IMG/VR virus record: IMGVR_UViG_3300018080_000098
Location: 62,001-126,000 of that record
Length of the DNA: 64,000 nucleotides
Direction: 5' to 3' (one strand)
Positions 11,609 through 43,135 of the stretch are shown in pieces. The position numbers and the translations under genes are program-made. The notes under the pieces are model-generated. The model saw only the letters and a program-made list of their open reading frames with translations. It searched no databases and was not told the DNA's origin. Position 1 is the first letter of the stretch. Each line of letters begins with the position of its first letter.

Positions 11609-12589
11609 TTACTCCGATGTAGCATGCCATCGGAAGAGCATCATAAATCCGTTCATCTCACACGGTTCCGTTCCTGCGTAGTTTTTCTCTAGAACCATAC
11701 CTAGTTTCCAGTGACGGCTTATCCATTCTACTAAATATGCATCAATTTCAAACACGCCTCTAGGTGAACCTAGGCTAACGTTGCGACAGAGGTAAATGGG
11801 GGGTGGTTCTACAAGTAATATTTGGATTCTTTGATCGTACTTTCCGAGTTCTGCAGAGTCGGTGTAAATAGTTATCTCTTCAGTTCTTTCGTTTACCACC
11901 CACGGACCGGAGCTGTCTGGGATAGGAACCGCAGCAGAGAGGTCGACATCGTATTCTCCATCTCCTGCTGCTGGGATAACGATGTAATTGTACGGGGCAT
12001 CCATCAGGTTGCAGTTACCGGTGCCGCCCGGGTTGGGAGTAACAGAGCTGACTGCAAACTTTACGTAGACCGAAAAGAGATCTATTCCACTGAAGCCACT
12101 GACGGGCTTCCAATTTATCTCGCCATCGTGGAGGTAGACGCCTTCCGCAAATTGGAGTTCTATATTTTTTGCTCCAGTCTCTTCAGCAGCGTAGACGATG
12201 TGAGCAACAGTACCTTCACCACGTTTAACGGGTGGTCCCAGATCGTCTCCGCAAGAGGTATACCACGTGTAAGATCCTCCTGGAGCTGGTGTTGGGACAA
12301 TCACCTGTTTCCCATCGCTGTCGAAACGAGCGCCTTCAATTTTAACTTCTACTGCGTCGTCTTCCAGTGGCTCTCCACTATGATTAGCAACAACAGTGTC
12401 TAGTCTGTTCCTGTTTTCACCATCTAGTTCGTTCTTGAACCAGATATTGCAATCGTCGTCAACAATCTCAATGTAGTCTAAGGCAACAGTGATTTCGCTT
12501 TCCTCTATCTCCTCAGTTAAACGAGGAATGTCTACCTTGTGATTTGGAAAGTCGTTTTGGATTGAGTATGTGTATTTTGTTGCAGCCAT
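11609..12589 (-). CDS. Putative virion accessory protein (326 aa)
   Basis: N-terminal ~70 aa paralogous to 12594..13241 (YTYSI..DFP...V.I..L.EEI..S.I..AL......D.CNI.F..ELD). Confidence 0.75.
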   Translation of the reverse strand: MAATKYTYSIQNDFPNHKVDIPRLTEEIEESEITVALDYIEIVDDDCNIWFKNELDGENRNRLDTVVANHSGEPLEDDAVEVKIEGARFDSDGKQVIVPTPAPGGSYTWYTSCGDDLGPPVKRGEGTVAHIVYAAEETGAKNIELQFAEGVYLHDGEINWKPVSGFSGIDLFSVYVKFAVSSVTPNPGGTGNCNLMDAPYNYIVIPAAGDGEYDVDLSAAVPIPDSSGPWVVNERTEEITIYTDSAELGKYDQRIQILLVEPPPIYLCRNVSLGSPRGVFEIDAYLVEWISRHWKLGMVLEKNYAGTEPCEMNGFMMLFRWHATSE

Positions 12590-12593
12590 TTTA

Positions 12594-13241
12594 CTACACC
12601 TGCATCAGCTCAATACGAGCTGCGCTCAAGCTTGCTGTTTGCGATTTATGCGAGGAGGCAAACTGAATTGCTATACTGTGTGAACCTTCCGTAAGAGCTC
12701 GCTTAGTAAAAAAACTATGCTCAATTGAGGCCCCCTTCCAACCACCATCACCCATACTCAAAGCTGGACTTACTTCTTTTTCTAACAATACGGTAACCCC
12801 GTCCAAAACAATTCTGTATTTTACATCTTTGTTGTACTTGGCTGCGCTTAGATTGAAGCCCCAATGGATATAATAGCTTCCACTGGGAATGAGAGGAACG
12901 TTGAGCGTAAGTGTATCAACATATTCAGTTCTGTTTGTTTTGTACTCTTTTTCCGATTCCGCGAACCACAGTTCTTCTTCTGGTGTTGGGTTCCCATCAT
13001 GGCTACCAATAATACTAGAGCCGCTAGGAGGGGAGGTGTTACCGTCTAAAACAGTCTTGTCATCTGTGTCTAGCTCAGTAACAAATATTATGTTGCACAC
13101 ATCCCCTTTTGTACTGACACCTCGTAGGGCTGCTTTGATAGTGCTTACTCTTATTTCCTCTTCCAGCAGTGCTATGTTCACTTCTCCAAGAGGGAAATCT
13201 GAAGAGATGCTGTACGTGTATTCAAACCCAGGTCCCAACAT
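12594..13241 (-). CDS. Putative virion accessory protein (215 aa)
   Basis: Shares its N-terminal domain with 11609..12589; beta-sandwich-like C-terminus; TGATG coupling with the upstream fibre gene. Confidence 0.75.
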   Translation of the reverse strand: MLGPGFEYTYSISSDFPLGEVNIALLEEEIRVSTIKAALRGVSTKGDVCNIIFVTELDTDDKTVLDGNTSPPSGSSIIGSHDGNPTPEEELWFAESEKEYKTNRTEYVDTLTLNVPLIPSGSYYIHWGFNLSAAKYNKDVKYRIVLDGVTVLLEKEVSPALSMGDGGWKGASIEHSFFTKRALTEGSHSIAIQFASSHKSQTASLSAARIELMQV

Positions 13242-16200
13242 CAGCTCAACCTCATTACTGTCAATCTGGTTCCATAGACAATTGTTCTCAATATACTTGG
13301 GCCAGACAGGCGTTCAACTCCAATGGCTAAACTGTCTCCGTTGTTGAGATCTAAAACAACTGTGGCGCTACAAGAAGTGGCACCCTGCGAAGCGTTTCGA
13401 TGATACATCCGTGCACGTGTACCTGCCACTTCTATAAATCCTAATCCAGTGTCCAAAAACAAAGAAGCTTCGCTTTCTGTTCGCGTAGTACCACTATTTA
13501 TACCAATAGTTGTTTCGCACACAATTTTGTATCTGCCATCCGCATTAACAGTGATTGCATCTGATGCTAGTGTGTACAGGTTTCCAATCACTGTAGTAGC
13601 GTCTAAATTAATTTGAGTTAGTGTGGTAAATGCTTGGTTACCTAGTGAGTCGTAGGCGGTAACAGCATCGTTTGCACGTTCACCGCCAATTCTGTACAGG
13701 CCTTCAGCTGTGTTGTAGTCGGCGGTTCCGCTGGCAACCGGGTGTCTATTGTCTATACCGTACGAAGGAGAGGTTGTTCCTAACCCGATAGGGCCATCTT
13801 TATCGAGGTGCAGTAGTTGGGTTGTGGTACCAGAGCTATTCTCTATGTGTAGCGGGTACGTATTAGCATCGTTGGCTGTTTTAATATACAGTCCGCTCCT
13901 ATCCGTATCTCCACGGAGCGTGAGGCAGTAGTTAGATTCAGCTGCTCCTCCAATAGAAATTTCGTCGTTGGTGGGGTCAATTTTCAGTATGTTGGTAAAT
14001 GTAGATCCAGGCCACGTAGTAATATCATTGTCATCTACTACGATGCCTGTGTCCTGTAACAAGTCTCCTCCTGTTCCATTCCACCGAGTTAACGCGTGGT
14101 CGGTGCTGGGAGGAGAAGCTTTCACCTGAGCATCATTAGTGACGTTTCCCAATCCTACTTGGGCAGCAGTTACGCTGTGCGGGTTAGTAGTGACATCACC
14201 TAGGTGGTTGTCAATCTGCGCATGACTGTTGACCCCCCTATTTAGAATAGTGAGGTGATCAACGTCTCCCTCTACTGTGCTAAACTTTATTTTCTTTTTG
14301 CTGTAGCCGTCGCTGCTGTCTTCGATCAGGAAAAGATCGTCTGCACCAATGTCAGCACTCGAGGGAAAAGAATCAAAGTCTGCCGCTTCCCTGTCTAGGC
14401 CAGCATGTACGTGGTCTGAACGTGAAACAGTGGAAGCACTTCCTGGTGCGTTCGTTGCCCCAACAGCTACCGGCGTTCCAGTAGTAATACCATGCTGGTG
14501 GTCACTACGAGCAAAATTATTAGCAGTTCCTTCCGCTGGTGAAGCTCCTACTTGTACGGCTACTGGGGTACCAGTAGATAGTGAATCGGCAGCCCCTGGA
14601 ACATGCCTGGATGCATGAGATGATACGTCTACGCCATCTACCGTACCAACATTGGAGATGTTGTTGCTCCCCATGTTTAGGGAGCCACCCATTGCGCGGG
14701 CCCCACTGGTCAGAAGATACTGAGAGTGGTCATCCGACCCTAAACCAGCTAGATCTCCGTGCACAGTGATTGCAGTCCCACCCGACCCCGATGAAGCGCC
14801 AATAGGACGTTCATCTACAAACGAAACTATACCGTTTCCCTGTTCCACAATTAAACGCGAAAGATAAATACCACTCTCTTCTATGAATGTGGGTTTGTTC
14901 TCTAGCGAAGCAGCTTCAGCCAAAGTTTGGGTGGAGAACTCCTCAGTTCCATAAATAACTGATATACGGCCATCGGAAGTTAAGATCACTGTGTCAGACC
15001 GGAAATACCCAGCAGTCATCGCTGTAAGTGTCCCCGAATCGTCATAATTAGTTGTGTCTACGTCAATCTGGCTCGCTACTTCTGTCGCACCATTGGTCCC
15101 ATAAAAATAAGAGAACGTAGCATCACCACCGCTACCAGCATAAGTAATAATATCTACGGCACGGTAGTAACTGCCGCTGCCCAGCTCAAATCTAGTACCA
15201 GTAGTTCCTGCTGTAACAGCTAATCCCGACTTTAAAAGCAGCTTACGTGTGGTGTTTAAATAATTCTGAAGTTTCGCACCAAACCCGTGACTGATGCTTC
15301 TAGTTTGGTGAATGAATCTTACGCTGGTTGGTCCGGTTTCAACGATAGCGAGTAGCAACGTGGTAGAGCCAGGTTCCGACGTAGCAGCTGTGATAGCTTC
15401 TGAGACAGAATCGTAACCAATGTAATTAGAAGCGTCCGCAGTTAGGGAAAGCCCAGTAACAGCGTCCCAAAAAACATCGAAAGCATCATCGTTGGCCTGT
15501 CTAGAAATCCATCCATTTCCAGCAGAGACATCTACAGTTAGCCCACCACCATCGGTGACAAGGCCATCACTGTCTTCTGTTATTCCAGTGGAGGTTTGGT
15601 CGTGGAACCACTTCTCCAACGCCATAGACTTGAAAGTTGTGAACCAATAACTAAAATCTCCGGCGAGGAAAGTGCGGGCAAAGGAAGTAGATTGCACTAT
15701 ACCTGAAAGAATTGAGCCAGGAACAGCGGACCATTTAAACTCATCTGAGGAGGCACTGACTAAAAATACTCCTGTAGCGCTATCACACTGACCATTAATA
15801 GTATTTCCAAAGTAAGCGCAACTTTGGATAATAAAGGTTGTATCAGACCCAGTCGACCCGATGCGAGTTCCTCTGTAGCAATTGGATACTTCGCTAGCAA
15901 GAAGTGTGCATTTGGAACCATTATCGGCTAGGAGCGCGTCCGGTGTATTGTCTTTGTTAGCTATTCTAAATGTAGCCCCTACAATATATGCTTCCGCAGA
16001 ATCATCTACTATGATTCCGGTTTGTAAAGGGTTATTGGCGTACGCGGGAAGGACTGCAGATGGTACAGAGAAGAATCCTCCAACCATTCCTAGGTAGGAA
16101 TCACTACCACTAACGCTAATACCTGTGGTAACTGCAATACCAGCGGCATCAATATTGATCGAGAAATTAGTGGCAATTACCTTAGCACCATTTTCAACTG

Positions 16201-17665
16201 CTACTCCCGTAGCACAGCCCTTTAATCCTACTCCGTGTAAAACCACCAGTGAATTTGCAGTAGCAGCGCGAATAATCGCTTTTGTTGGGTCCGTAACTCC
16301 ATAACACTCCAATCCACAAATAGACCCACCAGTACACGTGAATAAATCTTCTGCTGAATTGTTGGCTTCTACGTAAACTGAATCCATCCTACTTGCAGAC
16401 GTAGTGGTTACCAGTACTCCTGGTTGAACCGTCATTGGATCTTCAGTGTACGTACCAGGGAAAACTGCAATCTCGTAGGGATTAGTAGCAGACGCGCCAG
16501 CAGCTATTGCTGCGTCTATCGCAGCTTTAATTGATGTGTAATCTCCACCAGTAGGAGAAACCCTAAAATATTTTTCAGGGTTCTTTAATCTGTCGTCCGA
16601 ATCAGTAACGTAAGGATTAGCGCCAGAAGGAGAACCACCTACCCCAGCAAGTGCGAATATTTGTGACGCTGTTACAGGGTTAAGGCCAGATACGTTGAAA
16701 GATATTTTTCCGTCTGTTACGTCCGACTTTAAAACGCTCCCAACGTTTTGTACCTCTCCCGTGAATGGGTCCTGATCTGGCGGAGGTCTCAGAAAATCAC
16801 CAGCGTCACCTAGCACAAGTTGGTCCGTTACCGCCCACGATGATGTATCCGACGTGATAACTCCCTGGACTAACATCTCCCCATTAGTATCATCATTGAC
16901 CGCCGAGACAATATAACCAATTGCTGGCCTTGCATTTGGATCGTCTTTGTCCGCCACTACGATTAACGGGAGATCTTCTGTGTCGTTCCACCCTCCTGAA
17001 GCTACTAGAGTGCCAGCTGGAATAACACTACCTGTTTCATTTCTGCACCCAACTATTATGCTGCCTTCACTCAGCTCGTCCAGCTTTGTTTTGTCTCCTG
17101 GGAGCATTAGCCCAGATTCGGTGGCAGTCACGTCGGGAATAATATCTGTGCCACCGTCAATATGACTAGAGGCGTGCGCGTTTGGGTCTCTGGGATCTCC
17201 CACATCATCTAGAGTAGCATCTGTAATAACCGCGTTTAGTTCGGCTAAAGAACCGCTACCAAGATTACCGACATCTGTTGCGTGAGGATTGTCTGTCTGC
17301 CCCCGATGAGTAGTATTCGCAGCTACGTCACTGTTCGCTGAAACTCTACCTTCCGTATAATAGAGATTAGACCCTTCTGTAACTTCATCGGTACTCAGTT
17401 GCCCATAATGTGCAGTGCCCCCAATCTCGTGTGGAGCAACAGCATCATCGTAAGCTTGGGCATAAGGGATTATCGATCCACCCTCACTATCAAGGCGAAC
17501 TAAATCTCCTGTGGACAGCCCAGTGTCCAAGTTCACACTGCGTCGTATGTCTTCGAAGTAGTATGCTGAGTGCAGATCAATTTCTTCCCCGGCTGGAAGG
17601 GACAGACCTAAGTCTTCTATCTCGTAGCCTGCGCCAGTAGTATTTCGAATCCAGAATTCAGCCAT
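13241..17665 (-). CDS. Large fibre/tailspike-like protein (1474 aa)
   Basis: His-containing shaft motifs (HASSH, DHSQYL, RSDHxH, NPHSVTAAQVGLGNVTND), a DUF2190-like module, a beta-helix-like start (GDYTSIKAAIDA...FPGTYTE) and a C1q/BclA-like C-terminus. Confidence 0.8.
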   Translation of the reverse strand: MAEFWIRNTTGAGYEIEDLGLSLPAGEEIDLHSAYYFEDIRRSVNLDTGLSTGDLVRLDSEGGSIIPYAQAYDDAVAPHEIGGTAHYGQLSTDEVTEGSNLYYTEGRVSANSDVAANTTHRGQTDNPHATDVGNLGSGSLAELNAVITDATLDDVGDPRDPNAHASSHIDGGTDIIPDVTATESGLMLPGDKTKLDELSEGSIIVGCRNETGSVIPAGTLVASGGWNDTEDLPLIVVADKDDPNARPAIGYIVSAVNDDTNGEMLVQGVITSDTSSWAVTDQLVLGDAGDFLRPPPDQDPFTGEVQNVGSVLKSDVTDGKISFNVSGLNPVTASQIFALAGVGGSPSGANPYVTDSDDRLKNPEKYFRVSPTGGDYTSIKAAIDAAIAAGASATNPYEIAVFPGTYTEDPMTVQPGVLVTTTSASRMDSVYVEANNSAEDLFTCTGGSICGLECYGVTDPTKAIIRAATANSLVVLHGVGLKGCATGVAVENGAKVIATNFSINIDAAGIAVTTGISVSGSDSYLGMVGGFFSVPSAVLPAYANNPLQTGIIVDDSAEAYIVGATFRIANKDNTPDALLADNGSKCTLLASEVSNCYRGTRIGSTGSDTTFIIQSCAYFGNTINGQCDSATGVFLVSASSDEFKWSAVPGSILSGIVQSTSFARTFLAGDFSYWFTTFKSMALEKWFHDQTSTGITEDSDGLVTDGGGLTVDVSAGNGWISRQANDDAFDVFWDAVTGLSLTADASNYIGYDSVSEAITAATSEPGSTTLLLAIVETGPTSVRFIHQTRSISHGFGAKLQNYLNTTRKLLLKSGLAVTAGTTGTRFELGSGSYYRAVDIITYAGSGGDATFSYFYGTNGATEVASQIDVDTTNYDDSGTLTAMTAGYFRSDTVILTSDGRISVIYGTEEFSTQTLAEAASLENKPTFIEESGIYLSRLIVEQGNGIVSFVDERPIGASSGSGGTAITVHGDLAGLGSDDHSQYLLTSGARAMGGSLNMGSNNISNVGTVDGVDVSSHASRHVPGAADSLSTGTPVAVQVGASPAEGTANNFARSDHQHGITTGTPVAVGATNAPGSASTVSRSDHVHAGLDREAADFDSFPSSADIGADDLFLIEDSSDGYSKKKIKFSTVEGDVDHLTILNRGVNSHAQIDNHLGDVTTNPHSVTAAQVGLGNVTNDAQVKASPPSTDHALTRWNGTGGDLLQDTGIVVDDNDITTWPGSTFTNILKIDPTNDEISIGGAAESNYCLTLRGDTDRSGLYIKTANDANTYPLHIENSSGTTTQLLHLDKDGPIGLGTTSPSYGIDNRHPVASGTADYNTAEGLYRIGGERANDAVTAYDSLGNQAFTTLTQINLDATTVIGNLYTLASDAITVNADGRYKIVCETTIGINSGTTRTESEASLFLDTGLGFIEVAGTRARMYHRNASQGATSCSATVVLDLNNGDSLAIGVERLSGPSILRTIVYGTRLTVMRLS

Positions 17666-17677
17666 GATGCCCTAGTC

Positions 17678-20613: not shown

Positions 20614-21360
20614 CTAAGCCTTCTTCAGGGGTCTACTGAGCTCCACGACCAGAATAGAAGCAGTTTTCGCGTAGCCTACTTGCTGTATAACATTCCCGCT
20701 TGTGGATGGTGGAGTGATAGTGACAGCGCCCGCAGTAGTGGCTGAAACGTAGTAGTAGTTATCAGCAGTTAAAGTAAACCCGGTCATTTCTCCTGAACGC
20801 CCAACGATACACGTGGTTGGGTTGGGTTTAGCTCGCACTATTCCTACGCTTGGCATTGTAGCAGTTGTGTTTGCACGAGCTTTGTCTACACTATCTGGTC
20901 CCGTTTGATAAACTACATCCCGAATTGCCACTGTAGCTGGGCATGCCCATTCTGTTTCTAGCAGTTCAATTTGTGGGATGGGGTCGGCTCCATCGAAGAC
21001 GTGCGTGCTGCCGTGTGCAGGAACTATTCCACCTGGTCCAATTATTACACCGTCCAGGTCATGTGTGGGTTCTCCAAACTTCTGCCTCAGTGCTCCTGTA
21101 GCATCTACCCAATAAGTGTACCCACCTAGGCGTAGTTTTGGCTCCTGGTCCCACTCCGACACGTAATCGATCACCTCATCCAGGTTAACAATTCTGATGA
21201 TGTTTTTGGTAAGGAGATCGCGTATCCTGTAGTCGTTGGTGAGCTTGTCGTATTCTACATACTGGTAGTCCTTTGTTTGGCGCGGACCAAGATTATCGTC
21301 GACTGGATTAGGTAACCCAACCGGGCTCGTCATCAACAAATTTGTGATCCGCACACCCAA
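20614..21360 (-). CDS. Putative capsid decoration/fibre protein with C-terminal DUF2190-like domain
   Basis: TTG start with AGGAG; N-terminus paralogous to 21828..23354; C-terminal DVVY...KARA....PSVGIV...GEMTG...YYVS...G.VT.TPP...IQQVG. Confidence 0.7.
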   Translation of the reverse strand: MGVRITNLLMTSPVGLPNPVDDNLGPRQTKDYQYVEYDKLTNDYRIRDLLTKNIIRIVNLDEVIDYVSEWDQEPKLRLGGYTYWVDATGALRQKFGEPTHDLDGVIIGPGGIVPAHGSTHVFDGADPIPQIELLETEWACPATVAIRDVVYQTGPDSVDKARANTTATMPSVGIVRAKPNPTTCIVGRSGEMTGFTLTADNYYYVSATTAGAVTITPPSTSGNVIQQVGYAKTASILVVELSRPLKKA

Positions 21361-21731: not shown

Positions 21732-21817
21732 AGCAGCCCCTACTACCAGGGCTGCTCATTATGCCGCCCCTACTACCAGGGCAGCGCGTTAAACCATCCC
21801 TACTACCAGGACGGCTC
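21732..21817 (-). repeat. Three tandem hairpins, 30-nt period, invariant core CCTGGTAGTAGGG (minus strand)
   Basis: Plus-strand CCCTACTACCAGG at 21738, 21768 and 21798; the flanking arms differ between copies but each pairs. Confidence 0.9.
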
Positions 21818-21827
21818 CTCGCTAAAT

Positions 21828-34732: not shown

Positions 34733-37447
34733 CTACAGGCTGACGCGTGTGCCAATCTGGATGACGAACTTGTTGGCAGCGGTGATGACTCCGACTTTCT
34801 GCACAACAGAGGCACCAGGAGTAGTAGAAACTGCTCCGTCCGCATTCATGTACACGTACTCGCCAGTGTCAGCAGCGGCCAATGCACTACTAGATGTCAC
34901 CTCTCCAGCGAGTGCGATTTCGATGTCTACACCGATCGCGCCACCGTTCAGCGCTACACCAATAGCGCGGCTGGCTGCTGCCACCCCCTGGTCTGCCTGG
35001 TACACCGTATTAGCTGCACCGTTATCCAAGGCTACGAGGTCACCTGTGGTGATGGCTTCTGCAGCTGGGTAAGTGATGGTGGTGTCGCCAACACCAGCAA
35101 CAGCTGTATCCAACGCGAGCAGCGCACTCACTATGGATGTTTCCGCTCCGATGTAGGTACCACCAGTGATGTCCTGGTTGACCGCGTCGTTGTAGGTGAG
35201 AGAGTTTCCTGCGGACCCACGTGCCTCGAACGTGATGTCCCCAGTTGCCCCAGCGACGAGGTCTACGTCGGTAGTTCCGTCGTTCACACCAATCGTGATA
35301 GTGCGGTCGCCATCGGTTCCGATGTTGATACCAAAGTCATCATCATCGTTACCGATGTTTATGGCACCCCCATCGGAATTTAGCGATAACGTAGTACCAG
35401 CATCCAGGTCCATCGTAGTTGTGGCATCTAGACCGATTGAGGTGGTAGCTGTTACTGTGGTGCTAGTTGTGGAGTCAATAGCCACAGCGCCATCCGAATC
35501 GATGTCGATGTCGTCGGCTACCAAGTAGACTTCCGTAGCATCGTTGCTACCTACTTGGATGGTCCGTGCGCCACCAGTACCAACGTTGATATTCTGCGCT
35601 ACAGCATCATCACCAACGTTAATGACTCCTCCAGACGAGTTTATGGAGAGTATGCCACCAGCATCTAGATCCATTGTCGTTGTGGAGGTTGCTGCAACTG
35701 CCCCGTCCGAATCGATGTCGATGTCGTCGGCTACCAAGTAGACTTCCGTAGCATCGTTGCTACCTACTTGGATGGTCCGTGCGCCACCAGTACCAACGTT
35801 GATGTTTTGAGCTACTGCATCGTTACCAACGTTAATTACGTCGCCAGAGGAATTGATGGACACTGCACCGGTTCCATCGATATCCACTGTTGTACCAGCT
35901 ACTCCTACTGGGATGGCCCCGCCAGCACCAACGTTGAAGGCTGTGCCATCGAAGTCCATATCGCCGCCGTCCACATCTAGTGTGGTAGCGTTGAGATCGA
36001 CTGTTTGCCCAGTACCATCAAGTGTTAGTGTGCCTCCAGTAGAGGTGACTGTCACACCACCACCACCTGTGAGGCTGAGCAGGTTCGCACCTGTAGTCGA
36101 CACCGTCATGGTGTTCGCGTTGGTCAGCGTGCGCCCAGCCGTACCGTCGAACGTGATGTTGGTGCCTACGAGGCCAGCGAAATTTACTTCGCGCTCGTTC
36201 ACGCCGCCAGTGGACCCAAGGATCAACGCATCATTGGTCTCGTCGACCCGCAGGAAATCGTCACCATTGTCATCTGTCCAGATAATGTCCCAGTCGGAAC
36301 CAGCTGTAACTTCCCAAGTAAGGTCCCCTGTGGCATCGAGGGTAACTGTTGCCGGTCCACCACCGAAGGCATCGTAGGCTTGCTGCAAGTCGTTACCGAG
36401 GGAACTACCGACAGCTGTCCAGTTCATTCCATCAGCATCACAGAAGTAGATTTTACCACCAGCAGCGGTGCTCATGCATATGTCACCAGTGGTACCAGTG
36501 ACGTTTCCATCCGGGTCTCCGTTGTACACGAAGATGGATCCGTTGATCGAACCTTCTTCGTCAGCGAGTGTTAGGATCGCCTGTTCGGTCGCGCCACGTG
36601 TAATTGTTGCGCCACCATTTTTATTCATTGTCAGGCGCGCGTCTGCGTACCCGTTGTACACCTCGAATAGGTTGTCGTCTGTATTCAGCGCGTAGTTGAC
36701 GGGTCCTACGTTTGCTGTGAACGCAGCGTTGACTTCGAGTGAGGTGTCATTAGTAATCGAGTCGACTCTTCTAATGTCTATTGTTGTACCGTTATCGAGG
36801 TCAACTTCGATGGCATCGCCCACCTGTAGCTCTGTGGTGAACGACGAGTTGGTAGCGGTTAGTGTTGTCCCGTTTGTGGTGTAGTTGTCGCGCGTGAGCG
36901 CTACACCCAAACCACCTTGCGCGATTGTGGTTCCTTCGGGAACAATCTTCAGATCGCCACTCGTGGTAGTGAAGTGGGATGTAACTGCAGCCGCGAAGTT
37001 AATCGCCTGATCTACACTAGCTGTGATGGTCAGTGTATCAGTAGAGGCGTCACCGATATCGGTGTCGCCATTGAAGGTTGCAGAGCCTGTTACTGTCTCC
37101 GCACCGTCCACATCGAGGTCACCCTTGATAGTAACTGTTTGCCCCACGCGTCCGATGTTGATATCGGTGGCGTTCGTTCCGCCGATATTAAACGCTTGCA
37201 CAGCATCCGTATCGATGCCTACACCGAACTGCACCACCGTTGCGTTCGTTCCACCGATGACCAGCGCTTCCGCTGCGTCTTTATCGATGTTTGCACCGAA
37301 CTCGACAGCAGTCGCGTTCGTTCCACCTACTGTCAGAACGCCACCACCGGAACCAAAGTCAACTGATGCTGCCAGAAGACCATCGTTGTCGGAGTCCAGT
37401 TGTGTGACTGATCCAGCGTTAATCCAAAGTGCTTCTCTGTCTGCCAT
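34733..37447 (-). CDS. Acidic Gly/Thr/Asp-rich fibre with C-terminal DUF2190-like domain (possible head fibre; 904 aa)
   Basis: IGGTNAT and INVGTGGARTI repeats; C-terminal AAEAITTGDLVAL...RAIGVAL...GEYVYM...VQKVG. Confidence 0.8.
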   Translation of the reverse strand: MADREALWINAGSVTQLDSDNDGLLAASVDFGSGGGVLTVGGTNATAVEFGANIDKDAAEALVIGGTNATVVQFGVGIDTDAVQAFNIGGTNATDINIGRVGQTVTIKGDLDVDGAETVTGSATFNGDTDIGDASTDTLTITASVDQAINFAAAVTSHFTTTSGDLKIVPEGTTIAQGGLGVALTRDNYTTNGTTLTATNSSFTTELQVGDAIEVDLDNGTTIDIRRVDSITNDTSLEVNAAFTANVGPVNYALNTDDNLFEVYNGYADARLTMNKNGGATITRGATEQAILTLADEEGSINGSIFVYNGDPDGNVTGTTGDICMSTAAGGKIYFCDADGMNWTAVGSSLGNDLQQAYDAFGGGPATVTLDATGDLTWEVTAGSDWDIIWTDDNGDDFLRVDETNDALILGSTGGVNEREVNFAGLVGTNITFDGTAGRTLTNANTMTVSTTGANLLSLTGGGGVTVTSTGGTLTLDGTGQTVDLNATTLDVDGGDMDFDGTAFNVGAGGAIPVGVAGTTVDIDGTGAVSINSSGDVINVGNDAVAQNINVGTGGARTIQVGSNDATEVYLVADDIDIDSDGAVAATSTTTMDLDAGGILSINSSGGVINVGDDAVAQNINVGTGGARTIQVGSNDATEVYLVADDIDIDSDGAVAIDSTTSTTVTATTSIGLDATTTMDLDAGTTLSLNSDGGAINIGNDDDDFGINIGTDGDRTITIGVNDGTTDVDLVAGATGDITFEARGSAGNSLTYNDAVNQDITGGTYIGAETSIVSALLALDTAVAGVGDTTITYPAAEAITTGDLVALDNGAANTVYQADQGVAAASRAIGVALNGGAIGVDIEIALAGEVTSSSALAAADTGEYVYMNADGAVSTTPGASVVQKVGVITAANKFVIQIGTRVSL
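35493..35803. repeat. 98-bp perfect direct repeat (35493-35590 and 35706-35803), 213-bp period, inside the fibre gene
   Basis: Base-for-base identity including wobble positions; encodes INVGTGGARTIQVGSNDATEVYLVADDIDIDSD twice. Confidence 0.92.
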
Positions 37448-37465
37448 GGGTTGCCCCTTTCCTTT

Positions 37466-38052: not shown

Positions 38053-38100
38053 GGTTTTTTGTGGGATAGAGAGGAGGGAAAGGAAGGGATTTCTGGCAGG

Positions 38101-38565: not shown

Positions 38566-38576
38566 TCTCACGCTCC

Positions 38577-41369
38577 TCACGGATACTCGATGGTCACCTG
38601 GTAGAAGTGGACCGCTTTGTTGTGCCTGCACTGGCAAGGCATGTGCAAGATGGCGAACAGGAAGCTCGTACCAATTTCTGCTGGGATGGGTGACCAAATA
38701 ATTTCTGCGAACAGCCCGAGCTCGCCTATGGGCGCGGTTACTACTTCCTTTGGAACTCTACACCAATAGGTAACTTCCCACGGGTCCATTGGGTAGTTGG
38801 TGGTATCGTACGTAATTTGTGTTATGCGGCTTCGATATATCTCGTTGATCAATGCGGTGTCTGCAGTGTTCACCGGAACAACTGTAGTGGGGGCCGTGGG
38901 CACAAATCCGCCGGTTCCCACCGCGAATTCGGTGATCGCGTAGATGGTGCCGTCTACTGCCGATCGGGCGATGTACCCGGCTGGGAAGGGATCGTCCGCC
39001 AGGTCGGTAAGCTGCAGATCACTCGCTCCCGGAGTGCCCGATAGAATAGGTGCTGTTTGCAGCTGTACTCGAACCTGGGTAAGGAACGCCTCTCCCTCGA
39101 GGACCACCATCCCGTATTCGGCTCCATCAATTTCTGCGATGGTCCAGGGAGCTCCGCTGAAGGGAGAGGTGAAGTACTCTTCCCGGAGCTCGAACCAGCT
39201 CCCACCAGTGTTCCCGATGGAGAAGGTCTTCCCCACGTACGTTTCGCCGCCATAGCGAATGAGCGGCGCCACGACCGCAGTTGTGGTAGCTCCGCCCAGC
39301 CTCACGATGCAACGTACCTGCACAGCGTACGCTTGCTCTCCTGGAGGGAAAGCTCCTACTGGTGGGCCTACGGTGAACGTGCCGTACTGGGTGGTCCCTA
39401 CTGCAGTAGCGTCCGCTCCCAGGTAGCTCGTGTTGTAATCGGGAGGAGTTTCGTCCACGTTCTGCCAACGAGAGCCTGGAACTTGTGGGGGCACCTGTAC
39501 CGGGTAGTCTTGGTGGTAGCCATCAGCGGTGGGTAGCATATCGAAGGTGTTCAGGGGCGTGTGTTTCTGGAACACCTCGGCAGCTACCGTGGTGACGCGC
39601 AAGTCGCCGTCCAGGTTCTTCACCCCTACCTCGAGCAGGTCCACCTGCGCAGAGTTCCAAGACGTGTACCCCGGGGACCCAGATGGCCATCCAGTAGAAG
39701 GGTCGTTGATGAACTCCTCCTCAATCAGATGCCACTTGCCATCTGCTGGGATTTCCCAACCTTCATCACTGTGAGCTCCCAGATAGTTCGTTCCTGCTGA
39801 GCGACTTACCACAGCACAGCGCGCAACGTTCTCTCCCATGTTTTTGACCAGACAGCTGGCCTGCACCCGGTCGATATTGGGAGGGTAGGTAGGCGTCGTA
39901 AAATTTGAGAGCGTAAAAATGGATATGGGGAGCCAACCGTTCTCCTGGTACGCCAAGGATAACCCGTCGTCGCCCACCACAAAGATGTTGGTTGCCAGGC
40001 TTCCCCAGATACCGTAGAGGTGCTCCGTACGGAAGGAGGGCTTCTCCTGCCACAGCGCGCCATCCCAGCGAAGGGTCAAGCCGTTCTCCCCCACAACGAG
40101 CACGTCGGTGCTACTGCCACCCCACACACCTTGTAGGGATTCCACTGTACCGGATGCCATCGGTGCCCAGACTGCACCGTTCCAGTGTAGGATTGTTCCA
40201 GCGAACCCGACTGCGAAAACATCCGACGCGGCGGTACCCCACACACCGAACAGGTCTCGGATGGTTCCACTAACAAGAGGAGCCCAGACGGCTCCGTTGT
40301 AGTAGATGATTTCGCCCGTGTCACCCACGACGAAGATGTTGTTCGCATCAGCACCCCAGATGGCGTAGAGGTCTTGCGCAGACCCCGATGCCATAGGAAC
40401 CCAGGTAACACCATCCCAGTTGGTGACGAGCCCGTTTCTGCCCACTGCGAAGACGTTGTTGGTTGCGGTGCCCCAGACTCCTCGCAGCTGCTCGAGGGTG
40501 TTCGAGGTCAAATCTGTCCAGGAGGTACCATCGTAGTGGAGGATAGTGCCTAGGTTTCCTACGGCGAACATGTCGTTGTTCGCGGTGCCCCACACTCCGT
40601 ACAGGTCTTTTTCGGTACCCGAATCTTGCTCATCCCACGTCGAGCCATCCCAGTAGAGGATGGTTCCGCCATCGCCCACAGCGAACACATCGTTGCTGGC
40701 GAAGCCGTACACGTCCCGGAGTGTCTCGGTAACTTCGGTGTCCAGCACCTGCCAAGCGGTAGTAGAGTAGATGTAGCTGCCGTCTCCGTCGAATTTGCCG
40801 ACGGACATGTGGGCGCTGGCAGTACCTGGGTAGTTGTGCCACTCCTGGAAGGAAGGGTTGATGCCGTTGGCTGCCATGGTTTGGTGCGAATAGAGCTCGG
40901 TGTGGACCTGAATTTCGAGCTTCGTACAGCGAAGTTCTGATCCTTCTACATAGACAAGTCCTGCTTCAACACCGTTGAGGCTGGTGGAGTTCCAGGCGGT
41001 TCCGTTGGGGCCTTGAAAGTAGGTGGCTGGTATTTCGATGTAGGTGTTGGAGGAGATAGTGATCTCTTCGCTATCGTAGTCTACACCTAGTTGCCGGACA
41101 CGAAGCTTAAATTTTGTGGGAAGAGCGCCGTTGACACGCACTGTTGCAATGAGAGTTGCGCTGCCCACTCGAGTAGGTCGTACGTACGATCCGGAAGAAG
41201 TATCGCTAAAGCAGACCGTAAAAGCGCCAGGCTCAGTTGTGTAGACGTAAGCAGTATCTCCATCAGAGTCCGCTTCATTGAGATTAGCCCAGAATGGATT
41301 TGCATTGTTGCTCGTCCAGTAGGTTGCGTACCGTCCTACGTTGTCTGGTCTGAGGATTTGGAGCGCCAT
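38577..41369 (-). CDS. Tail/baseplate appendage protein: three repeated beta-domains, inserted 7-blade propeller, C-terminal tail-collar-like (DUF3751-like) domain
   Basis: Seven 39-aa LxGVWG....DVFAVG..GTIL.WDG..W repeats; C-terminal ITEFAVGTGG...DTALINEIYR...IGELGLFA. Confidence 0.82.
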   Translation of the reverse strand: MALQILRPDNVGRYATYWTSNNANPFWANLNEADSDGDTAYVYTTEPGAFTVCFSDTSSGSYVRPTRVGSATLIATVRVNGALPTKFKLRVRQLGVDYDSEEITISSNTYIEIPATYFQGPNGTAWNSTSLNGVEAGLVYVEGSELRCTKLEIQVHTELYSHQTMAANGINPSFQEWHNYPGTASAHMSVGKFDGDGSYIYSTTAWQVLDTEVTETLRDVYGFASNDVFAVGDGGTILYWDGSTWDEQDSGTEKDLYGVWGTANNDMFAVGNLGTILHYDGTSWTDLTSNTLEQLRGVWGTATNNVFAVGRNGLVTNWDGVTWVPMASGSAQDLYAIWGADANNIFVVGDTGEIIYYNGAVWAPLVSGTIRDLFGVWGTAASDVFAVGFAGTILHWNGAVWAPMASGTVESLQGVWGGSSTDVLVVGENGLTLRWDGALWQEKPSFRTEHLYGIWGSLATNIFVVGDDGLSLAYQENGWLPISIFTLSNFTTPTYPPNIDRVQASCLVKNMGENVARCAVVSRSAGTNYLGAHSDEGWEIPADGKWHLIEEEFINDPSTGWPSGSPGYTSWNSAQVDLLEVGVKNLDGDLRVTTVAAEVFQKHTPLNTFDMLPTADGYHQDYPVQVPPQVPGSRWQNVDETPPDYNTSYLGADATAVGTTQYGTFTVGPPVGAFPPGEQAYAVQVRCIVRLGGATTTAVVAPLIRYGGETYVGKTFSIGNTGGSWFELREEYFTSPFSGAPWTIAEIDGAEYGMVVLEGEAFLTQVRVQLQTAPILSGTPGASDLQLTDLADDPFPAGYIARSAVDGTIYAITEFAVGTGGFVPTAPTTVVPVNTADTALINEIYRSRITQITYDTTNYPMDPWEVTYWCRVPKEVVTAPIGELGLFAEIIWSPIPAEIGTSFLFAILHMPCQCRHNKAVHFYQVTIEYP

Positions 41370-41380
41370 GAGGGACTACC

Positions 41381-41881
41381 TTAGAACTGCACGTTGACGC
41401 GAAAGGCGTACTTCATGGAGCTGTTTTTGCAGATGAGTGGGAAGTGCGCGATGGCTGCAAGGAAGACGGTGCCCACTTCGGATGTGATGGGGGAGCATTT
41501 GATTTCGGCCCAGATGCCTACTTCACTGAGGCGTTCGTTGGCTTCGGTAGTATCGAGTAAGCAGTACACGCAGGCTGCGTTGTCGTTGGGGTGCTCGTAC
41601 TCTGTGATGGCTTTAGTGGGACTACCTCCGATGTTGATGGGGAGCTCGAGCTGCACAGCATCGGGGTTGACGGGAGTGGATACGAGGTAGTCGAAGGGAT
41701 CAAGTCCTCCTTGGCCGACGGAGAACTCTATGGTCTCGAAACCCGTTCCATCTACCTTTCCACGAGCGAGCAGAGCTCGAGCTCGGGAGGTTACTTCGGC
41801 GTCTGTTTCCAGTAGCAGGAAGGTGCTCGGGTCTCCTCCGAAGACTGCGGAACCGAATTCTGAAGTGCCGAAGATGCCCAT
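41381..41881 (-). CDS. Tail-collar-fibre-like (DUF3751-like) protein
   Basis: VT..ARALLA...FSVGQGG..P...L.....LSEVGIWA....FLAAIAHFP; paralogous to 49318..49749. Confidence 0.7.
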   Translation of the reverse strand: MGIFGTSEFGSAVFGGDPSTFLLLETDAEVTSRARALLARGKVDGTGFETIEFSVGQGGLDPFDYLVSTPVNPDAVQLELPINIGGSPTKAITEYEHPNDNAACVYCLLDTTEANERLSEVGIWAEIKCSPITSEVGTVFLAAIAHFPLICKNSSMKYAFRVNVQF

Positions 41882-41884
41882 ATG

Positions 41885-43135
41885 TTAGCCGTTGGTACCG
41901 ATGGCTGCTCCAAGGTCGTCCATTTCGTAGTTCATAAGAGCAGCATATAAAAAAGGAACTCCTGTAGTGTTGGCTGTAGCTGTACGGAACCTCAGAGAGT
42001 AGGAGTGGCCGGTTCTGTCGATGTTGAACGATCCGGAGAGTGTGATAGTATTCACTCCCATGTCGGAAGCATAGGCAGTGGACAACACAGTAACGCTACT
42101 TCCTACTCCAGTATCTTTTTCTAGAAGCTCCAAACGGGGGCGCTGGCCTATAACGCCTGGCAATACTCCACCTCCCCAGTAGCCCCACACTTGCACTGAT
42201 TTCAGGACAGCCCGATTGGGAAGTGGGAGCGGGATAGCCAAGCGTTTGTCGTAGGAGTTGGAGCCAGTTTCGGTGCACTGCCAATAAATAGAAACTGGTG
42301 CAGAGTCGTCTGTGATATTGTAGAAGAAGTCTGGTTCGTACGTGCCTGCATCGAGGGTGTGCTGAGTGACGTAGGTAGCCGGGTCGAGGTACATCCGTAC
42401 CGGCCGTACAGAGCTCAGCATTAAGGTGTAGCGGTTGCCTTCAGTGAGAGATGAGTTGAAGGTGGTTATGTAAAGAGCGCTCCCCGAGCTTGAGTTGCAG
42501 TCACTAGTTACTTTCACTCCATGACCAGAGCTGTTGTTCTGGAGCACCTCCAACGCAGGGCCAGATGCTGCGCAGGTTACCAACGCAGCCCCTTCTGTAT
42601 CCGATGCGTTCTTGTTTTCGACGTGCAGTATAGGGGAGTCTGCTACCGCTTGGTCGCGGTCTACAACGAACCCGTAGTCGGTCGTAGCAGTCTGCGTGTA
42701 CGTCAACGGAGATGCGTTGATATCGAGCGCCTGGTCCAGTGCGTAGAGACCGTCCCAACTGTTGATGCCGGTGGCTGCCAGGTCGGTAAACGTTCCTACC
42801 GGATCGCCCGCTTTGTGGTAAGAAACGTTCCCAGTGCCGCTATCGATGAATATCCCACCTTCCGCCTGCAACCCTGGCCACACTGCGTGGCTTCCTGCCA
42901 TGCGGACGCCCTGGTTGGGTACACCACTCACCGTGAGCAGCCCCCAATCTACAGAGGTGACAGCGGGGTCGTCTAGCTTCCCCACACGCGTTTGCACAGC
43001 TACCAGTGCATCATCTGTGTTGTTACGGTACTCCGCAGCAATGTTGCGCGCAGGGTCGGCGGGAGGAATCACATCGACTTTCGTAGGGCCTAAAGTCGTT
43101 GCGTCGTCGAAGTCAGTAGGATATTTTGTGCTCAT
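41885..43135 (-). CDS. Short fibre / receptor-binding-like protein (416 aa)
   Basis: MSTKYPTDFD...DALVAVQTRVG anchor; middle and C-terminal modules shared with 29892..34616. Confidence 0.75.
   Translation of the reverse strand: MSTKYPTDFDDATTLGPTKVDVIPPADPARNIAAEYRNNTDDALVAVQTRVGKLDDPAVTSVDWGLLTVSGVPNQGVRMAGSHAVWPGLQAEGGIFIDSGTGNVSYHKAGDPVGTFTDLAATGINSWDGLYALDQALDINASPLTYTQTATTDYGFVVDRDQAVADSPILHVENKNASDTEGAALVTCAASGPALEVLQNNSSGHGVKVTSDCNSSSGSALYITTFNSSLTEGNRYTLMLSSVRPVRMYLDPATYVTQHTLDAGTYEPDFFYNITDDSAPVSIYWQCTETGSNSYDKRLAIPLPLPNRAVLKSVQVWGYWGGGVLPGVIGQRPRLELLEKDTGVGSSVTVLSTAYASDMGVNTITLSGSFNIDRTGHSYSLRFRTATANTTGVPFLYAALMNYEMDDLGAAIGTNG

What the first reader, a model, noticed from the sequence alone, without database searches (positions are those of the whole stretch)
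11609..43135. Exceptionally large arsenal of fibre/decoration proteins built from shuffled shared modules
Seen: more than ten appendage-like proteins in about 31 kb reuse modules. (a) GNDLxQAYDAFG...LTW and DIxFEAxGS in the 1574-aa and 904-aa proteins. (b) WDxxYAxDxxLDI...SPIL and the same C-terminal domain in the 1574-aa and 416-aa proteins. (c) A shared N-terminus in the 508-aa and 248-aa proteins. (d) A shared N-terminus in the 326-aa and 215-aa proteins. (e) The 97-aa protein resembles the N-terminus of the 769-aa protein. Inference: a combinatorial, possibly branched appendage network in which paralogous anchors dock different heads onto the virion.
Basis: partly seen in the sequence, partly recalled or inferred. 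Interest (0 to 1): 0.6.

Follow-up and report, generated by a model that had tools for sequence, protein, structure and literature searches.

The report
Modular tail-fibre gene cluster, jumbo phage
An uncultivated 350-kb phage from sediment carries, next to its baseplate genes, about 20 genes for fibre-like virion appendages that reuse protein modules; this resembles other giant phages, but one conserved two-gene joint stands out.

Summary
I found more: a C-terminal domain shared by the 204-, 248- and 904-aa proteins, and a domain shared by the 143-aa and 166-aa proteins and the 930-aa C-terminus.

The window lies in a complete 349,793-bp virus record with terminal repeats. The cluster sits just downstream of a Baseplate_J gene.

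Eight related contigs keep the gene order. Small and core proteins stay conserved. The large proteins keep only their N-termini, and their distal parts diverge, fuse, split or drop out.

AlphaFold models give two fold assignments:
- The shared C-terminal domain is a beta-tulip (Z 10 to capsid decoration proteins, 7.5 to the phi29 gp12 autochaperone).
- The 769-aa phiKZ-gp145-like protein is an array of Ig-like domains, not a tail sheath as its PHROG label says.

Only three of the relations involve N-terminal anchors. The rest are shaft or C-terminal modules, so the "paralogous anchors" inference is only partly supported.

Multi-fibre modular arsenals are already known (phiKZ gp131-135, Goslar DUF7941, phiKp24).

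The most interesting new point is a conserved junction. The Ig-array domain is always followed by a gene that starts with the 204-type N-module, and that gene's product ranges from 104 to 2,497 aa.

The parts
41885..43135 (-). 416-aa fibre-like protein. The N-terminal ~200 aa are conserved in relatives. Module B is at residues 95-177 (window 42605-42853). Module C, the C-terminal domain, is at residues 284-413 (window 41897-42286).
   Evidence: BLASTP and hhalign to the 1574-aa protein. Homologues share only the N-terminal half. The ESM Atlas model gives a jelly-roll/CBM-like lead for 241-408 and a PTL_trimer-like lead for the N-terminal part (lead only).
41381..41881 (-). 166-aa stand-alone copy of module G
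   Evidence: BLASTP E 5e-15 and hhalign E 7.5e-14 to 930 residues 778-929. BLASTP E 1e-14 to the 143-aa protein.
38577..41369 (-). 930-aa protein with C-terminal module G (residues 778-929, window 38583-39038), which resembles the N-terminal domain of tail-collar fibre proteins
   Evidence: PHROG 1780 'tail collar fiber protein' E 9e-6. Pfam PF12571 E 1e-3, below its cut-off. 58% identical over its full length to the G003 orthologue.
34733..37447 (-). 904-aa G/T/D/A-rich repetitive fibre. Contains 24-aa and 71-aa tandem repeats, module A (residues 339-492, window 35972-36433), the DIxFEAxGS half-module (residue 737) and C-terminal module E (residues 809-901, window 34745-35023).
   Evidence: Tandem DNA repeats of 213 nt and 72 nt. 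The G003 orthologue is 1401 aa with only residues 1-454 well conserved.
29892..34616 (-). 1574-aa fibre. The N-terminal ~290 aa are conserved in relatives. Module A is at residues 248-379 (window 33480-33875), module B at 478-573 (window 32898-33185). A long variable shaft follows, then module C at 1438-1573 (window 29898-30305).
   Evidence: Modules A+B have only 30 representatives among 1.84 billion proteins. Low G+C, 0.45.
27443..28963 (-). 506-aa conserved core protein of unknown fold
   Evidence: 55-88% identical in all eight relatives. No PHROG, Pfam, NCBIfam or PDB match.
27138..27431 (-). 97-aa stand-alone paralogue of the N-terminal domain of the 769-aa protein
   Evidence: hhalign with 8-sequence alignments: probability 92.7%, E 4e-7. 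With 4 sequences it was not significant.
24807..27116 (-). 769-aa phiKZ-gp145-like protein. N-terminal beta-beta-alpha-alpha-beta-beta domain (residues 1-81), a low-confidence linker, then five tandem Ig/FN3-like beta-sandwiches (residues 250-768, window 24813-26369).
   Evidence: 42% identical to PhiPA3 gp165. PHROG 15433 E 6e-107. At least 257 homologous clusters with varied N-termini. AF2 pLDDT 84, above 90 across the array. Matches titin, FdeC, intimin, invasin and RTX adhesin repeats.
24193..24807 (-). 204-aa protein: N-module (residues 1-87, window 24547-24807), glycine-rich linker, then module E beta-tulip (residues 97-197, window 24217-24519). Its start overlaps the stop of the 769-aa gene.
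   Evidence: The N-module follows the Ig-array gene in every locus examined.
21828..23354 (-). 508-aa accessory protein: module D (residues 1-131, window 22962-23354) plus a unique 370-aa body. With the 104-aa gene it forms a cassette present in 3 of 8 genomes.
   Evidence: PF26986 Cap_depo, weak. Present in G000, G001 and L041; absent in G002, G003 and L042-L044.
20614..21360 (-). 248-aa protein: module D (residues 1-131), a conserved linker with an HGxTH motif, and module E beta-tulip (residues 143-240, window 20641-20934)
   Evidence: PF26986 Cap_depo. AF2 pLDDT 83. Residues 132-248: Z 10.0 to the Adjutor decoration protein, 7.5 to the phi29 gp12 C-terminal fragment. BFVD matches to long tail-fibre-like proteins.
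17678..20611 (-). 977-aa mosaic spike/fibre protein. Its C-terminal ~150 aa (residues 826-976) are a separate gene in some relatives.
   Evidence: PHROG 4636 'tail spike' and 6002 'virion structural', E ~1e-25. The C-terminal part is a 190-aa gene in L041/L044, a 242-aa gene in G001/G002, and fused to a 614-aa protein in L043.
13241..17665 (-). 1474-aa fibre whose N-terminal ~150-176 aa are conserved and whose body is variable
   Evidence: Weak PHROG tail-fibre motifs at residues 1145-1180. G003 keeps only residues 4-149; G002 and L044 keep most of it.
12594..13241 (-). 215-aa protein with N-terminal module F (residues 4-99)
   Evidence: BLASTP E 5e-12 and hhalign E 6e-7 to the 326-aa protein. 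No orthologue in the relatives examined.
11609..12589 (-). 326-aa protein with N-terminal module F (residues 2-95) and a conserved C-terminal body
   Evidence: In G003 only residues 82-325 are conserved (66%); the N-terminus is not.
49318..49749 (-). 143-aa third copy of module G, outside the reported range
   Evidence: BLASTP E 1e-14 to the 166-aa protein and 9e-7 to the 930 C-terminus. G003 has the equivalent 145-aa gene.
52799..54229 (-). 476-aa Baseplate_J-like wedge protein (context: the baseplate module lies upstream in the same transcription direction)
   Evidence: PF04865, 23-26 bits, above its cut-off.

Best explanation
The region is the distal part of the tail morphogenesis operon of an uncultivated ~350-kb phage. 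It encodes a multi-component host-recognition apparatus attached at or near the baseplate.

About ten long or adhesin-like proteins are built from a small set of domains that were duplicated and shuffled long ago:
- two shaft modules, A and B;
- a C-terminal jelly-roll-like domain, C;
- a C-terminal beta-tulip knob, E;
- a tail-collar-like domain, G;
- three N-terminal domains: D, F and the 769 N-domain.

Inferred mechanism:
- Each large protein docks to the virion through its own lineage-conserved N-terminus.
- Its distal part is free to diverge and be swapped, which sets host range.
- The small 'headless' copies (97, 166 and 143 aa; perhaps 215 aa) occupy equivalent sites or co-assemble with their long paralogues, as the short gp132 does beside gp131 in phiKZ.
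- The 769-aa Ig-array protein and the next gene product form a serial joint. The ~90-aa N-module of the downstream protein binds the conserved Ig-array end, so the unit can carry anything from a bare cap to a 2,500-aa fibre.

Shown: the homologies, the folds of two proteins, the synteny, the conservation pattern and the invariable adjacency. Inferred: virion location, docking and host recognition.
For: - Module homologies.
- Baseplate_J gene directly upstream on the same strand.
- Tail-fibre, tail-spike or tail-collar PHROG hits in the 930-, 977-, 1474- and 885-aa proteins.
- The 769-aa protein is homologous to phiKZ gp145, called a putative tail fibre that tolerates no transposon insertions. 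It folds as an adhesin-like Ig array.
- Module E is a beta-tulip that also occurs in many long phage proteins annotated as tail-fibre-like, collagen-repeat or Mtd_N-containing.
- The 248-aa N-domain is PF26986 Cap_depo. It weakly matches a small tail protein encoded just upstream of the fibre genes in N4-like Klebsiella phages.
- In eight relatives the core genes stay at 55-88% identity. The large genes keep only their N-termini, with fusions, fissions and a presence/absence cassette.
- The Ig-array gene is always followed by a gene that starts with the 204 N-module. HMM E-values are 3e-49, 2e-27 and 9e-20 in three distant loci, and the downstream products are 104, 159, 201, 204, 1636, at least 1999 and 2497 aa.
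- Precedent for paralogous N-terminal anchors that form one fibre base: phiKZ gp131/133/134/135 (PMC13250141).
Against: - No proteomic or structural evidence that any of these proteins is in the virion.
- No tail sheath, tube or gp25 was recognised by Pfam in the genome, so the tail type rests on Baseplate_J alone.
- The closest solved matches of the beta-tulip are capsid decoration proteins. Ig-like arrays also occur in capsid decoration proteins such as T4 Hoc (my own knowledge). Some members could therefore sit on the head.
- Roughly half the ORFs in the range have no assignable function.
- The Ig array is the most conserved part of its protein, the opposite of a typical receptor-binding tip.
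- Adjacency of the Ig-array end and the N-module could also reflect one recombination block that spans the gene boundary.
Confidence: 0.65

Rival explanations
1. Some members are capsid decoration proteins or head fibres rather than tail appendages. These would be the beta-tulip-bearing 204-, 248- and 904-aa proteins and the Ig-array 769-aa protein. The beta-tulip would bind capsid three-fold sites, as in phi29 gp8.5, and the rest would project outward.
For: The best structural matches of module E are capsid decoration or cement proteins: Adjutor Z 10.0, HFTV1 9.2, Patience 8.8, Pam3 8.3, phi29 gp8.5 N-base 6.2. Ig-like arrays are typical of the capsid decoration protein T4 Hoc (my own knowledge).
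Against: - The beta-tulip is C-terminal here. In G004, L047 and L052 the 204-type N-module starts 1,600-2,500-aa proteins instead, which suggests the N-module is the anchor and the beta-tulip is the distal part.
- The same fold is the C-terminal autochaperone of the phi29 gp12 tail appendage (Z 7.5).
- BFVD matches are long tail-fibre-like proteins.
- The genes lie inside the baseplate/fibre operon.
- phiKZ gp145 is treated as a tail fibre.
Confidence: 0.15
2. The small paralogues (97, 166, 143 and 215 aa) are not virion parts. They would be assembly chaperones that transiently mimic a domain of their long partner. The C-terminal beta-tulip would be an intramolecular chaperone that is cleaved off after trimerisation.
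For: Module E resembles the phi29 gp12 C-terminal autochaperone fragment (3gqh, Z 7.5). BFVD hits include proteins annotated as 'intramolecular chaperone auto-processing domain containing'. Small genes next to fibre genes are often chaperones (general phage knowledge).
Against: - No S74-type chaperone or tail-fibre-assembly family was detected by Pfam, PHROG or NCBIfam.
- In the 204- and 248-aa proteins the beta-tulip is about half of the protein, so removing it would leave little.
- phiKZ's short gp132 is discussed as one of the gp131 paralogues.
Confidence: 0.15
3. The similarities are compositional artefacts of G/T/S/A-rich repetitive proteins and carry no evolutionary or functional meaning.
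For: The large proteins are strongly enriched in G, T, S, A and D and contain internal tandem repeats.
Against: - The matches survive profile-profile comparison with E down to 1e-14.
- They involve conserved non-repetitive motifs.
- They are retained as paralogous pairs inside the relatives.
- Two of them correspond to confidently folded domains.
Confidence: 0.02

Closest known systems
phiKZ gp131-gp135 paralogous baseplate-fibre family (PMC13250141; Sycheva 2012, as cited there)
   Same: Several paralogues share an N-terminal domain and carry different C-terminal parts. A short paralogue (gp132; 107 aa in PhiPA3) resembles only the N-terminus, like the 97-aa protein beside the 769-aa one. The genes lie in the baseplate region of a jumbo phage.
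   Different: No sequence similarity to the PhiPA3 gp150-154 homologues. Here most shared modules are internal or C-terminal. No six-helix bundle or beta-propeller is known here. The rest of the genome is not phiKZ-like: it has T4-type topoisomerase II, a recognisable DNA polymerase and a ribonucleotide reductase.
phiKZ gp145 / PhiPA3 gp165 (PHROG 15433)
   Same: 42% identity over ~470 aa with the 769-aa protein. It is followed by another large fibre-like gene (gp146/gp166).
   Different: The N-terminal 240 aa are unrelated. The PhiPA3 gp166 N-terminus shows no similarity to the 204 N-module. The PHROG 'tail sheath' label does not fit the predicted Ig-array fold, and the phiKZ sheath is gp29.
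Goslar/Chimalliviridae DUF7941 family (PMC13742148)
   Same: A family of paralogues with a common N-terminal module followed by carbohydrate-binding or other heads. It is proposed to be anchored at the peripheral baseplate for host recognition.
   Different: DUF7941 is described as chimallivirus-specific and was not detected here. Head-to-tail filament formation is not indicated for these proteins.
Hyperbranched or multi-RBP systems of phiKp24, RaK2, PhiK64-1, CBA120 and G7C (PMC9700779 for phiKp24; the others from my own knowledge)
   Same: A jumbo or large phage with about ten or more fibre/spike genes in one cluster, conserved attachment parts and exchangeable distal parts.
   Different: No depolymerase beta-helix families and no T4 gp10-like branching domains were detected. 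The only link is the small Cap_depo-type domain in the 248- and 508-aa proteins.
T4 long tail fibre joints (gp34-gp35-gp36-gp37; my own knowledge)
   Same: A fibre built from serially joined separate gene products encoded by adjacent genes. This is the working analogy for the Ig-array protein plus the downstream protein that bears the N-module.
   Different: No homology. The joint here is inferred only from invariant adjacency and co-conservation.
Beta-tulip decoration proteins and the phi29 gp12 C-terminal autochaperone
   Same: The fold of module E matches: Z 10.0, rmsd 2.8 over 107 residues to 8saj_3; Z 7.5 over 88 residues to 3gqh_A.
   Different: Here it is a C-terminal domain of three different appendage-like proteins, not a stand-alone capsid protein. 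No sequence-level similarity to solved structures.

Membership tests
phiKZ gp145-like proteins (PHROG 15433) | Sequence homology across the ~470-aa C-terminal region | tested here: met
   PHROG E 5.7e-107 over residues 260-707. 42% identity, E 1e-90, to PhiPA3 gp165.
Contractile-tail sheath (the label carried by PHROG 15433) | Sheath fold or a Phage_sheath Pfam domain | tested here: not met
   The AF2 model is an N-domain plus five Ig/FN3-like sandwiches; its best matches are adhesins and titin. There is no PF04984 hit anywhere in the genome. The phiKZ sheath is gp29.
Beta-tulip capsid decoration proteins | Beta-tulip fold | tested here: met
   248-aa model residues 132-248: Z 10.0, 9.2, 8.8 and 8.3 to decoration/cement proteins; Foldseek probability ~1.
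Beta-tulip capsid decoration proteins | Small stand-alone protein that binds capsid three-fold or quasi-three-fold sites | not testable with these tools
   Here the fold is the C-terminal domain of 204-, 248- and 904-aa proteins encoded in the baseplate/fibre operon. Capsid binding cannot be assessed.
phiKZ gp131-135 type anchor-sharing fibre family | Homology to the gp131 N-terminal domain | tested here: not met
   No significant match of any window or relative protein to PhiPA3 gp150-154.
phiKZ gp131-135 type anchor-sharing fibre family | Several paralogues share an N-terminal domain but differ C-terminally, including a short N-terminus-only paralogue | tested here: met
   508/248, 326/215 and 97/769. 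This is an analogy of organisation only.
Branched tailspike systems with T4 gp10-like adaptor domains (CBA120/G7C type) | gp10-like branching domains in one or more fibre proteins | tested here: inconclusive
   No such family appeared in the PHROG, Pfam or NCBIfam scans. Most proteins were not folded, so a divergent domain cannot be excluded.
Pfam PF26986 (Cap_depo) | Match to the family model | tested here: met
   Precomputed hits on the 248-aa protein and all 20 of its homologues; weak on the 508-aa protein. The model is not in my local Pfam copy, so I could not rescore it.
DGR-diversified Mtd-type receptor-binding proteins | A reverse transcriptase and a template/variable repeat pair | tested here: not met
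   No RVT_1 hit in the genome. No imperfect repeat pairs between genes in the region.
P2 gpJ / T4 gp6 baseplate wedge (context gene) | Baseplate_J domain above the curated cut-off | tested here: met
   476-aa protein: 23.1-26.5 bits against a cut-off of 21.1.

The most novel reading that the evidence does not exclude
The C-terminal Ig-array of the gp145-like family and the ~90-aa N-module of the gene that follows it form a portable two-gene docking joint. The joint is spread across otherwise unrelated large phages. It lets a conserved proximal adhesin-like arm carry interchangeable distal parts, from a 104-aa cap, through a beta-tulip knob (204 aa here), to 1,600-2,500-aa giant fibres. As far as I could find, such a joint has not been described.
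Probability: 0.35. Interest if true: 0.55.

Novelty: new member of a known kind. Interest (0 to 1): 0.35.

Why it matters
Host recognition by jumbo phages is poorly understood, and their peripheral baseplates and fibres are the parts that cryo-EM still fails to resolve.

This locus and its eight relatives give a clean comparative picture of which parts of a multi-fibre apparatus are fixed (core proteins and N-termini) and which are exchangeable.

The analysis corrects a propagated mis-annotation: gp145-like proteins are labelled 'tail sheath'.

It identifies the beta-tulip as a recurrent C-terminal fibre domain.

It points to a conserved Ig-array/N-module junction. If that junction is a real docking joint, it would be a natural handle for engineering or predicting fibre composition in large phages.

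In itself, a modular fibre arsenal in a jumbo phage is expected rather than surprising.

Tried and rejected
- Megablast of 20 kb against the phage collection found nothing.
- PHROG, Pfam and NCBIfam left most proteins unannotated.
- Sequence searches of the PDB with the 769-, 506-, 977-, 1474-, 1574- and 508-aa proteins and with the 248-family profile gave nothing usable.
- I first assumed a phiKZ-like genome because of the gp145 match. I rejected this: only that one domain is shared with PhiPA3, and the replication genes are of other types.
- The 'tail sheath' label for the 769-aa protein is rejected.
- Relation (e) looked insignificant with 4-sequence profiles. It became significant only after four more relatives were added, so it is the weakest of the five.
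- Similarity of the 204 N-module to the PhiPA3 gp166 (gp146-like) N-terminus: none.
- DGR hypothesis: no reverse transcriptase.
- Internal repeats by BLASTP self-comparison: none reported, although DNA-level tandem repeats exist in the 904-aa gene.
- The ESM Atlas search of the 769-aa protein was uninformative.
- The Pfam scan of the 28 module A/B homologues gave only sporadic adhesin domains.
No verdict exists.
- Two scripts failed and gave no data: one search timed out and one search had a parsing error.
- Read laying was not used. No RNA run holds the stretch.

Full report
**Where the window lies.** The window is bases 62,001-126,000 of a 349,793-bp IMG/VR virus record with direct terminal repeats, rated complete. 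It was assembled from a sediment metagenome; partial matches occur in another sediment sample and in seawater samples, and no RNA run holds it. From about 8.8 kb to beyond the window's end at 64 kb, every sizeable gene is on the minus strand. The reported range, 11,609-43,135, holds 22 called genes with about 10,200 codons in total.

**Genome type.** The genome is not close to any deposited phage. It encodes T4-type topoisomerase II subunits, a recognisable DNA polymerase, a helicase, a ribonucleotide reductase and an SbcC-like protein. It is therefore not a phiKZ-like (chimalli-) virus, even though one of its proteins has its only deposited-phage relatives there.

**Checking the observation.**
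- BLASTP among the local proteins recovers relations (a) to (d) with E from 3e-7 to 9e-17.
- To do the suggested profile test I fetched syntenic relatives: G001, G002, G003 and G004 and later L041-L044. I built ortholog alignments and ran hhalign all-against-all.
- Relations (a) to (d) hold, with E from 8e-6 to 9e-15. The C-terminal domain shared by the 416- and 1574-aa proteins is weaker (E 2.5e-4).
- Relation (e), the 97-aa protein against the N-terminus of the 769-aa protein, was not significant with four sequences per profile (E 0.016). It reached probability 92.7% and E 4e-7 over 66 columns with eight. It is real but is the weakest of the five.

- A C-terminal ~100-aa domain (module E) is shared by the 204-, 248- and 904-aa proteins.
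- A ~150-aa domain (module G) is shared by the 930-aa C-terminus, the 166-aa protein and a 143-aa protein at 49,318-49,749, outside the range.

**Is it more than chance?** Paralogy is strongly concentrated here: about 10 of 22 genes against about 25 of 440 elsewhere (p 6e-7). The same paralogous pairs exist inside the relatives. There are no DNA-level repeats between genes, so the duplications are old. The only DNA repeats are tandem duplications inside the 904-aa gene and an intergenic hairpin array.

**What the proteins are: family scans.**
- Family scans say little. Tail-collar-fibre, tail-spike and tail-fibre PHROGs touch the 930-, 977-, 1474- and (outside the range) 885-aa proteins.
- The 476-aa protein at 52,799-54,229 carries a Baseplate_J domain above the curated cut-off. 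This places the cluster directly downstream of baseplate wedge genes.
- Modules A and B (1574 residues 230-600) are rare: 30 representatives among 1.84 billion proteins, none with an informative Pfam domain. Module B recurs three or four times along some of those proteins.

**The 416-aa protein.** It has only five homologues, which share just its N-terminal half. Its ESM Atlas model suggests a jelly-roll/CBM-like C-terminal domain. The model is poor and the TM-scores are about 0.5, so this is only a lead.

**The 248-aa protein.**
- It has 20 close homologues, all carrying Pfam PF26986 'Cap_depo'.
- With that alignment AlphaFold gives pLDDT 83. There is an N-domain (residues 1-107), a low-confidence linker containing a conserved HGxTH motif, and a C-domain (residues 137-248).
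- The C-domain is a beta-tulip. It scores Z 10.0, 9.2, 8.8 and 8.3 to capsid decoration or cement proteins of Adjutor, HFTV1, Patience and Pam3. It scores 7.5 to the C-terminal autochaperone fragment of the phi29 gp12 appendage and 6.2 to the phi29 head-fibre base.
- In the viral predicted-structure library the same model matches many 500-1,400-aa proteins annotated as tail-fibre-like, collagen-repeat, Mtd_N or intramolecular-chaperone-containing.
- Part of the N-domain weakly resembles the C-terminal end of a Klebsiella phage depolymerase (Z 4.5). It also resembles a 232-aa tail protein encoded just upstream of the fibre genes of N4-like Klebsiella phages.

**The 769-aa protein.**
- It is the homologue of PhiPA3 gp165 / phiKZ gp145: 42% identity over 470 aa, while nothing else in the region is shared.
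- Its PHROG is labelled 'tail sheath'. However, the phiKZ sheath is gp29, and gp145/146 are regarded as putative tail fibres that tolerate no transposon insertions.
- The C-terminal 535 aa have at least 257 homologous clusters at 40-84% identity. They are fused to many different N-termini, including Phage_fiber_2, collagen, Mtd_N, BppL_N and PA14.
- With an 84-sequence alignment AlphaFold gives pLDDT above 90 for residues 250-769.
- The fold is five tandem Ig/FN3-like sandwiches. It is most like bacterial adhesins (FdeC Z 8.5, intimin, invasin, RTX repeats) and titin. It is not a sheath.

**Comparison with relatives.** Gene order is conserved in eight contigs.
- The 506-, 769-, 204-, 149- and 248-aa proteins stay at roughly 45-88% identity.
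- The 1574-, 904-, 416-, 1474- and 977-aa proteins keep their first 150-450 residues at 35-72%. Beyond that they drop to 25-30% or become unalignable, and their lengths change (904 to 1,401 aa; 416 to 534 aa).
- The last 150 aa of the 977-aa protein are a separate 190- or 242-aa gene in four relatives and are fused to a different protein in a fifth.
- The 508-aa + 104-aa cassette is present in three of eight genomes. The 127-aa gene is present in three.
- The variable fibre genes also have lower G+C (0.45-0.48 against about 0.55).
- This is the usual signature of virion-anchored proteins with exchangeable distal parts.

**A conserved junction.**
- G004 is a complete 157-kb phage that shares nothing else detectable with this locus. 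It shares the Ig-array (60% identity) and the first 87 residues of the next gene (65% identity to the 204-aa protein). There, that next gene encodes 2,497 aa.
- I then looked at three more distant Ig-array homologues (45-59% identity). In all three the next gene starts with the same N-module: HMM E 3e-49, 2e-27 and 9e-20. The products are 104, 159 and at least 1,999 aa.
- Two further loci found with the N-module as query also have the Ig-array immediately upstream. Their products are 201 and 1,636 aa; one has a ~1-kb insertion between the two genes.
- In one contig without DNA on hand, two Endonuclease_7 genes sit between the Ig-array gene and a 2,584-aa gene.
- This invariant adjacency, with a free choice of what follows the N-module, is best explained by a docking joint between the two products. 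One recombination block spanning the gene border is the alternative.
PhiPA3 gp166 shows no similar N-terminus.

**Interpretation.** The cluster most likely encodes the peripheral host-recognition apparatus of the tail. One of these pairs has a short 'headless' copy, which parallels phiKZ gp132 beside gp131. But modules A and B are internal, modules C and E are C-terminal, and G is C-terminal in the 930-aa protein. Each of the four largest fibres has its own N-terminus, and no gp10-like branching adaptor was found. The inference is therefore partly supported. The main rival is that the beta-tulip or Ig-array proteins decorate the capsid. It cannot be excluded, but gene context, domain order and the viral structural matches argue against it.

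**Comparison with known systems.**
- Paralogous fibre families anchored at the baseplate are established in phiKZ: gp131/133/134/135 form hetero-hexameric fibre bases (PMC13250141).
- They are proposed for the DUF7941 family of Goslar (PMC13742148).
- Hyperbranched multi-fibre sets are described for phiKp24 (PMC9700779).
- The present locus works like these but is not a sequence member of any of them, apart from the gp145-like domain and the Cap_depo domain.
- It is a new member of a known kind. The Ig-array/N-module joint is the one element that may be new.

Noticed in passing
window 21733-21822 (minus strand), between the 508-aa and 104-aa genes; also L003:13260-13350 and L041:14965-15060: Three tandem 30-nt units, each a hairpin with an invariant core CCCUGGUAGUAGGG. 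The outer stems differ by compensatory changes between copies and between relatives. The array starts just after the stop codon of the 508-aa gene and occurs nowhere else in the 350-kb genome. RNA fold energy is -54 kcal/mol, z -3.1. No Rfam match. It belongs to the accessory 508+104 cassette.
   Followed up: partly
window 10705-11625 (minus strand): A 306-aa patatin-like phospholipase (PF01734, E 1.8e-19). Its start overlaps the end of the 326-aa gene, at the tail end of the fibre operon. It is 70% identical in G003. It could be a virion-associated or lysis-related lipase.
   Followed up: partly
window 24807-27116 and PHROG 15433: The 'tail sheath' annotation of gp145-like proteins (PhiPA3 gp164/165 in RefSeq; other records say tail assembly protein or hydrolase) appears to be a propagated error. 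The predicted fold is an Ig-like array.
   Followed up: yes
window 43849-49281, 55350-58007, and 59272 to beyond the window end: The appendage arsenal extends beyond the reported range. It includes an 1810-aa protein, an 885-aa protein with a tail-fibre N-terminal motif (PHROG 1980, E 6e-11), and a 1982-aa protein with a weak metallo-endopeptidase motif, possibly a tape measure or tail lysin.
   Followed up: no
window 30000-34000 and 12000-18000: G+C drops to 0.45-0.48 in the 1574-, 1474- and 977-aa genes, against 0.53-0.57 in neighbouring genes. This is consistent with different ancestry or different constraints on the variable fibre genes.
   Followed up: no
window 35466-35891 and 37167-37310: Tandem duplications inside the 904-aa gene: two 213-nt copies at 83% identity (two 71-aa repeats) and two 72-nt copies.
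   Followed up: partly
contig behind P0079 (no DNA on hand) and L052:1253-2211: In two relatives the otherwise tight Ig-array/N-module gene junction is interrupted. In one, two Endonuclease_7 genes sit there; in the other, a ~1-kb insert. This suggests homing-endonuclease-type insertions at the junction.
   Followed up: no
window 8874-10701 (minus strand): Downstream of the patatin gene there is a 325-aa protein with an N-terminal hydrophobic segment. There is also a 267-aa Ala/Pro/Lys-rich protein with a signal-peptide-like N-terminus. They may be envelope-acting or lysis proteins.
   Followed up: no
G004 (L022-L024), genes at 43641-46949 of the 60-kb stretch: Three tandem paralogous ~365-aa genes (40-46% identical) lie downstream of the giant fibre genes of the 157-kb relative. 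The 883-aa Ig-array protein there shares its first 157 aa (66% identity) with a 960-aa protein.
   Followed up: no
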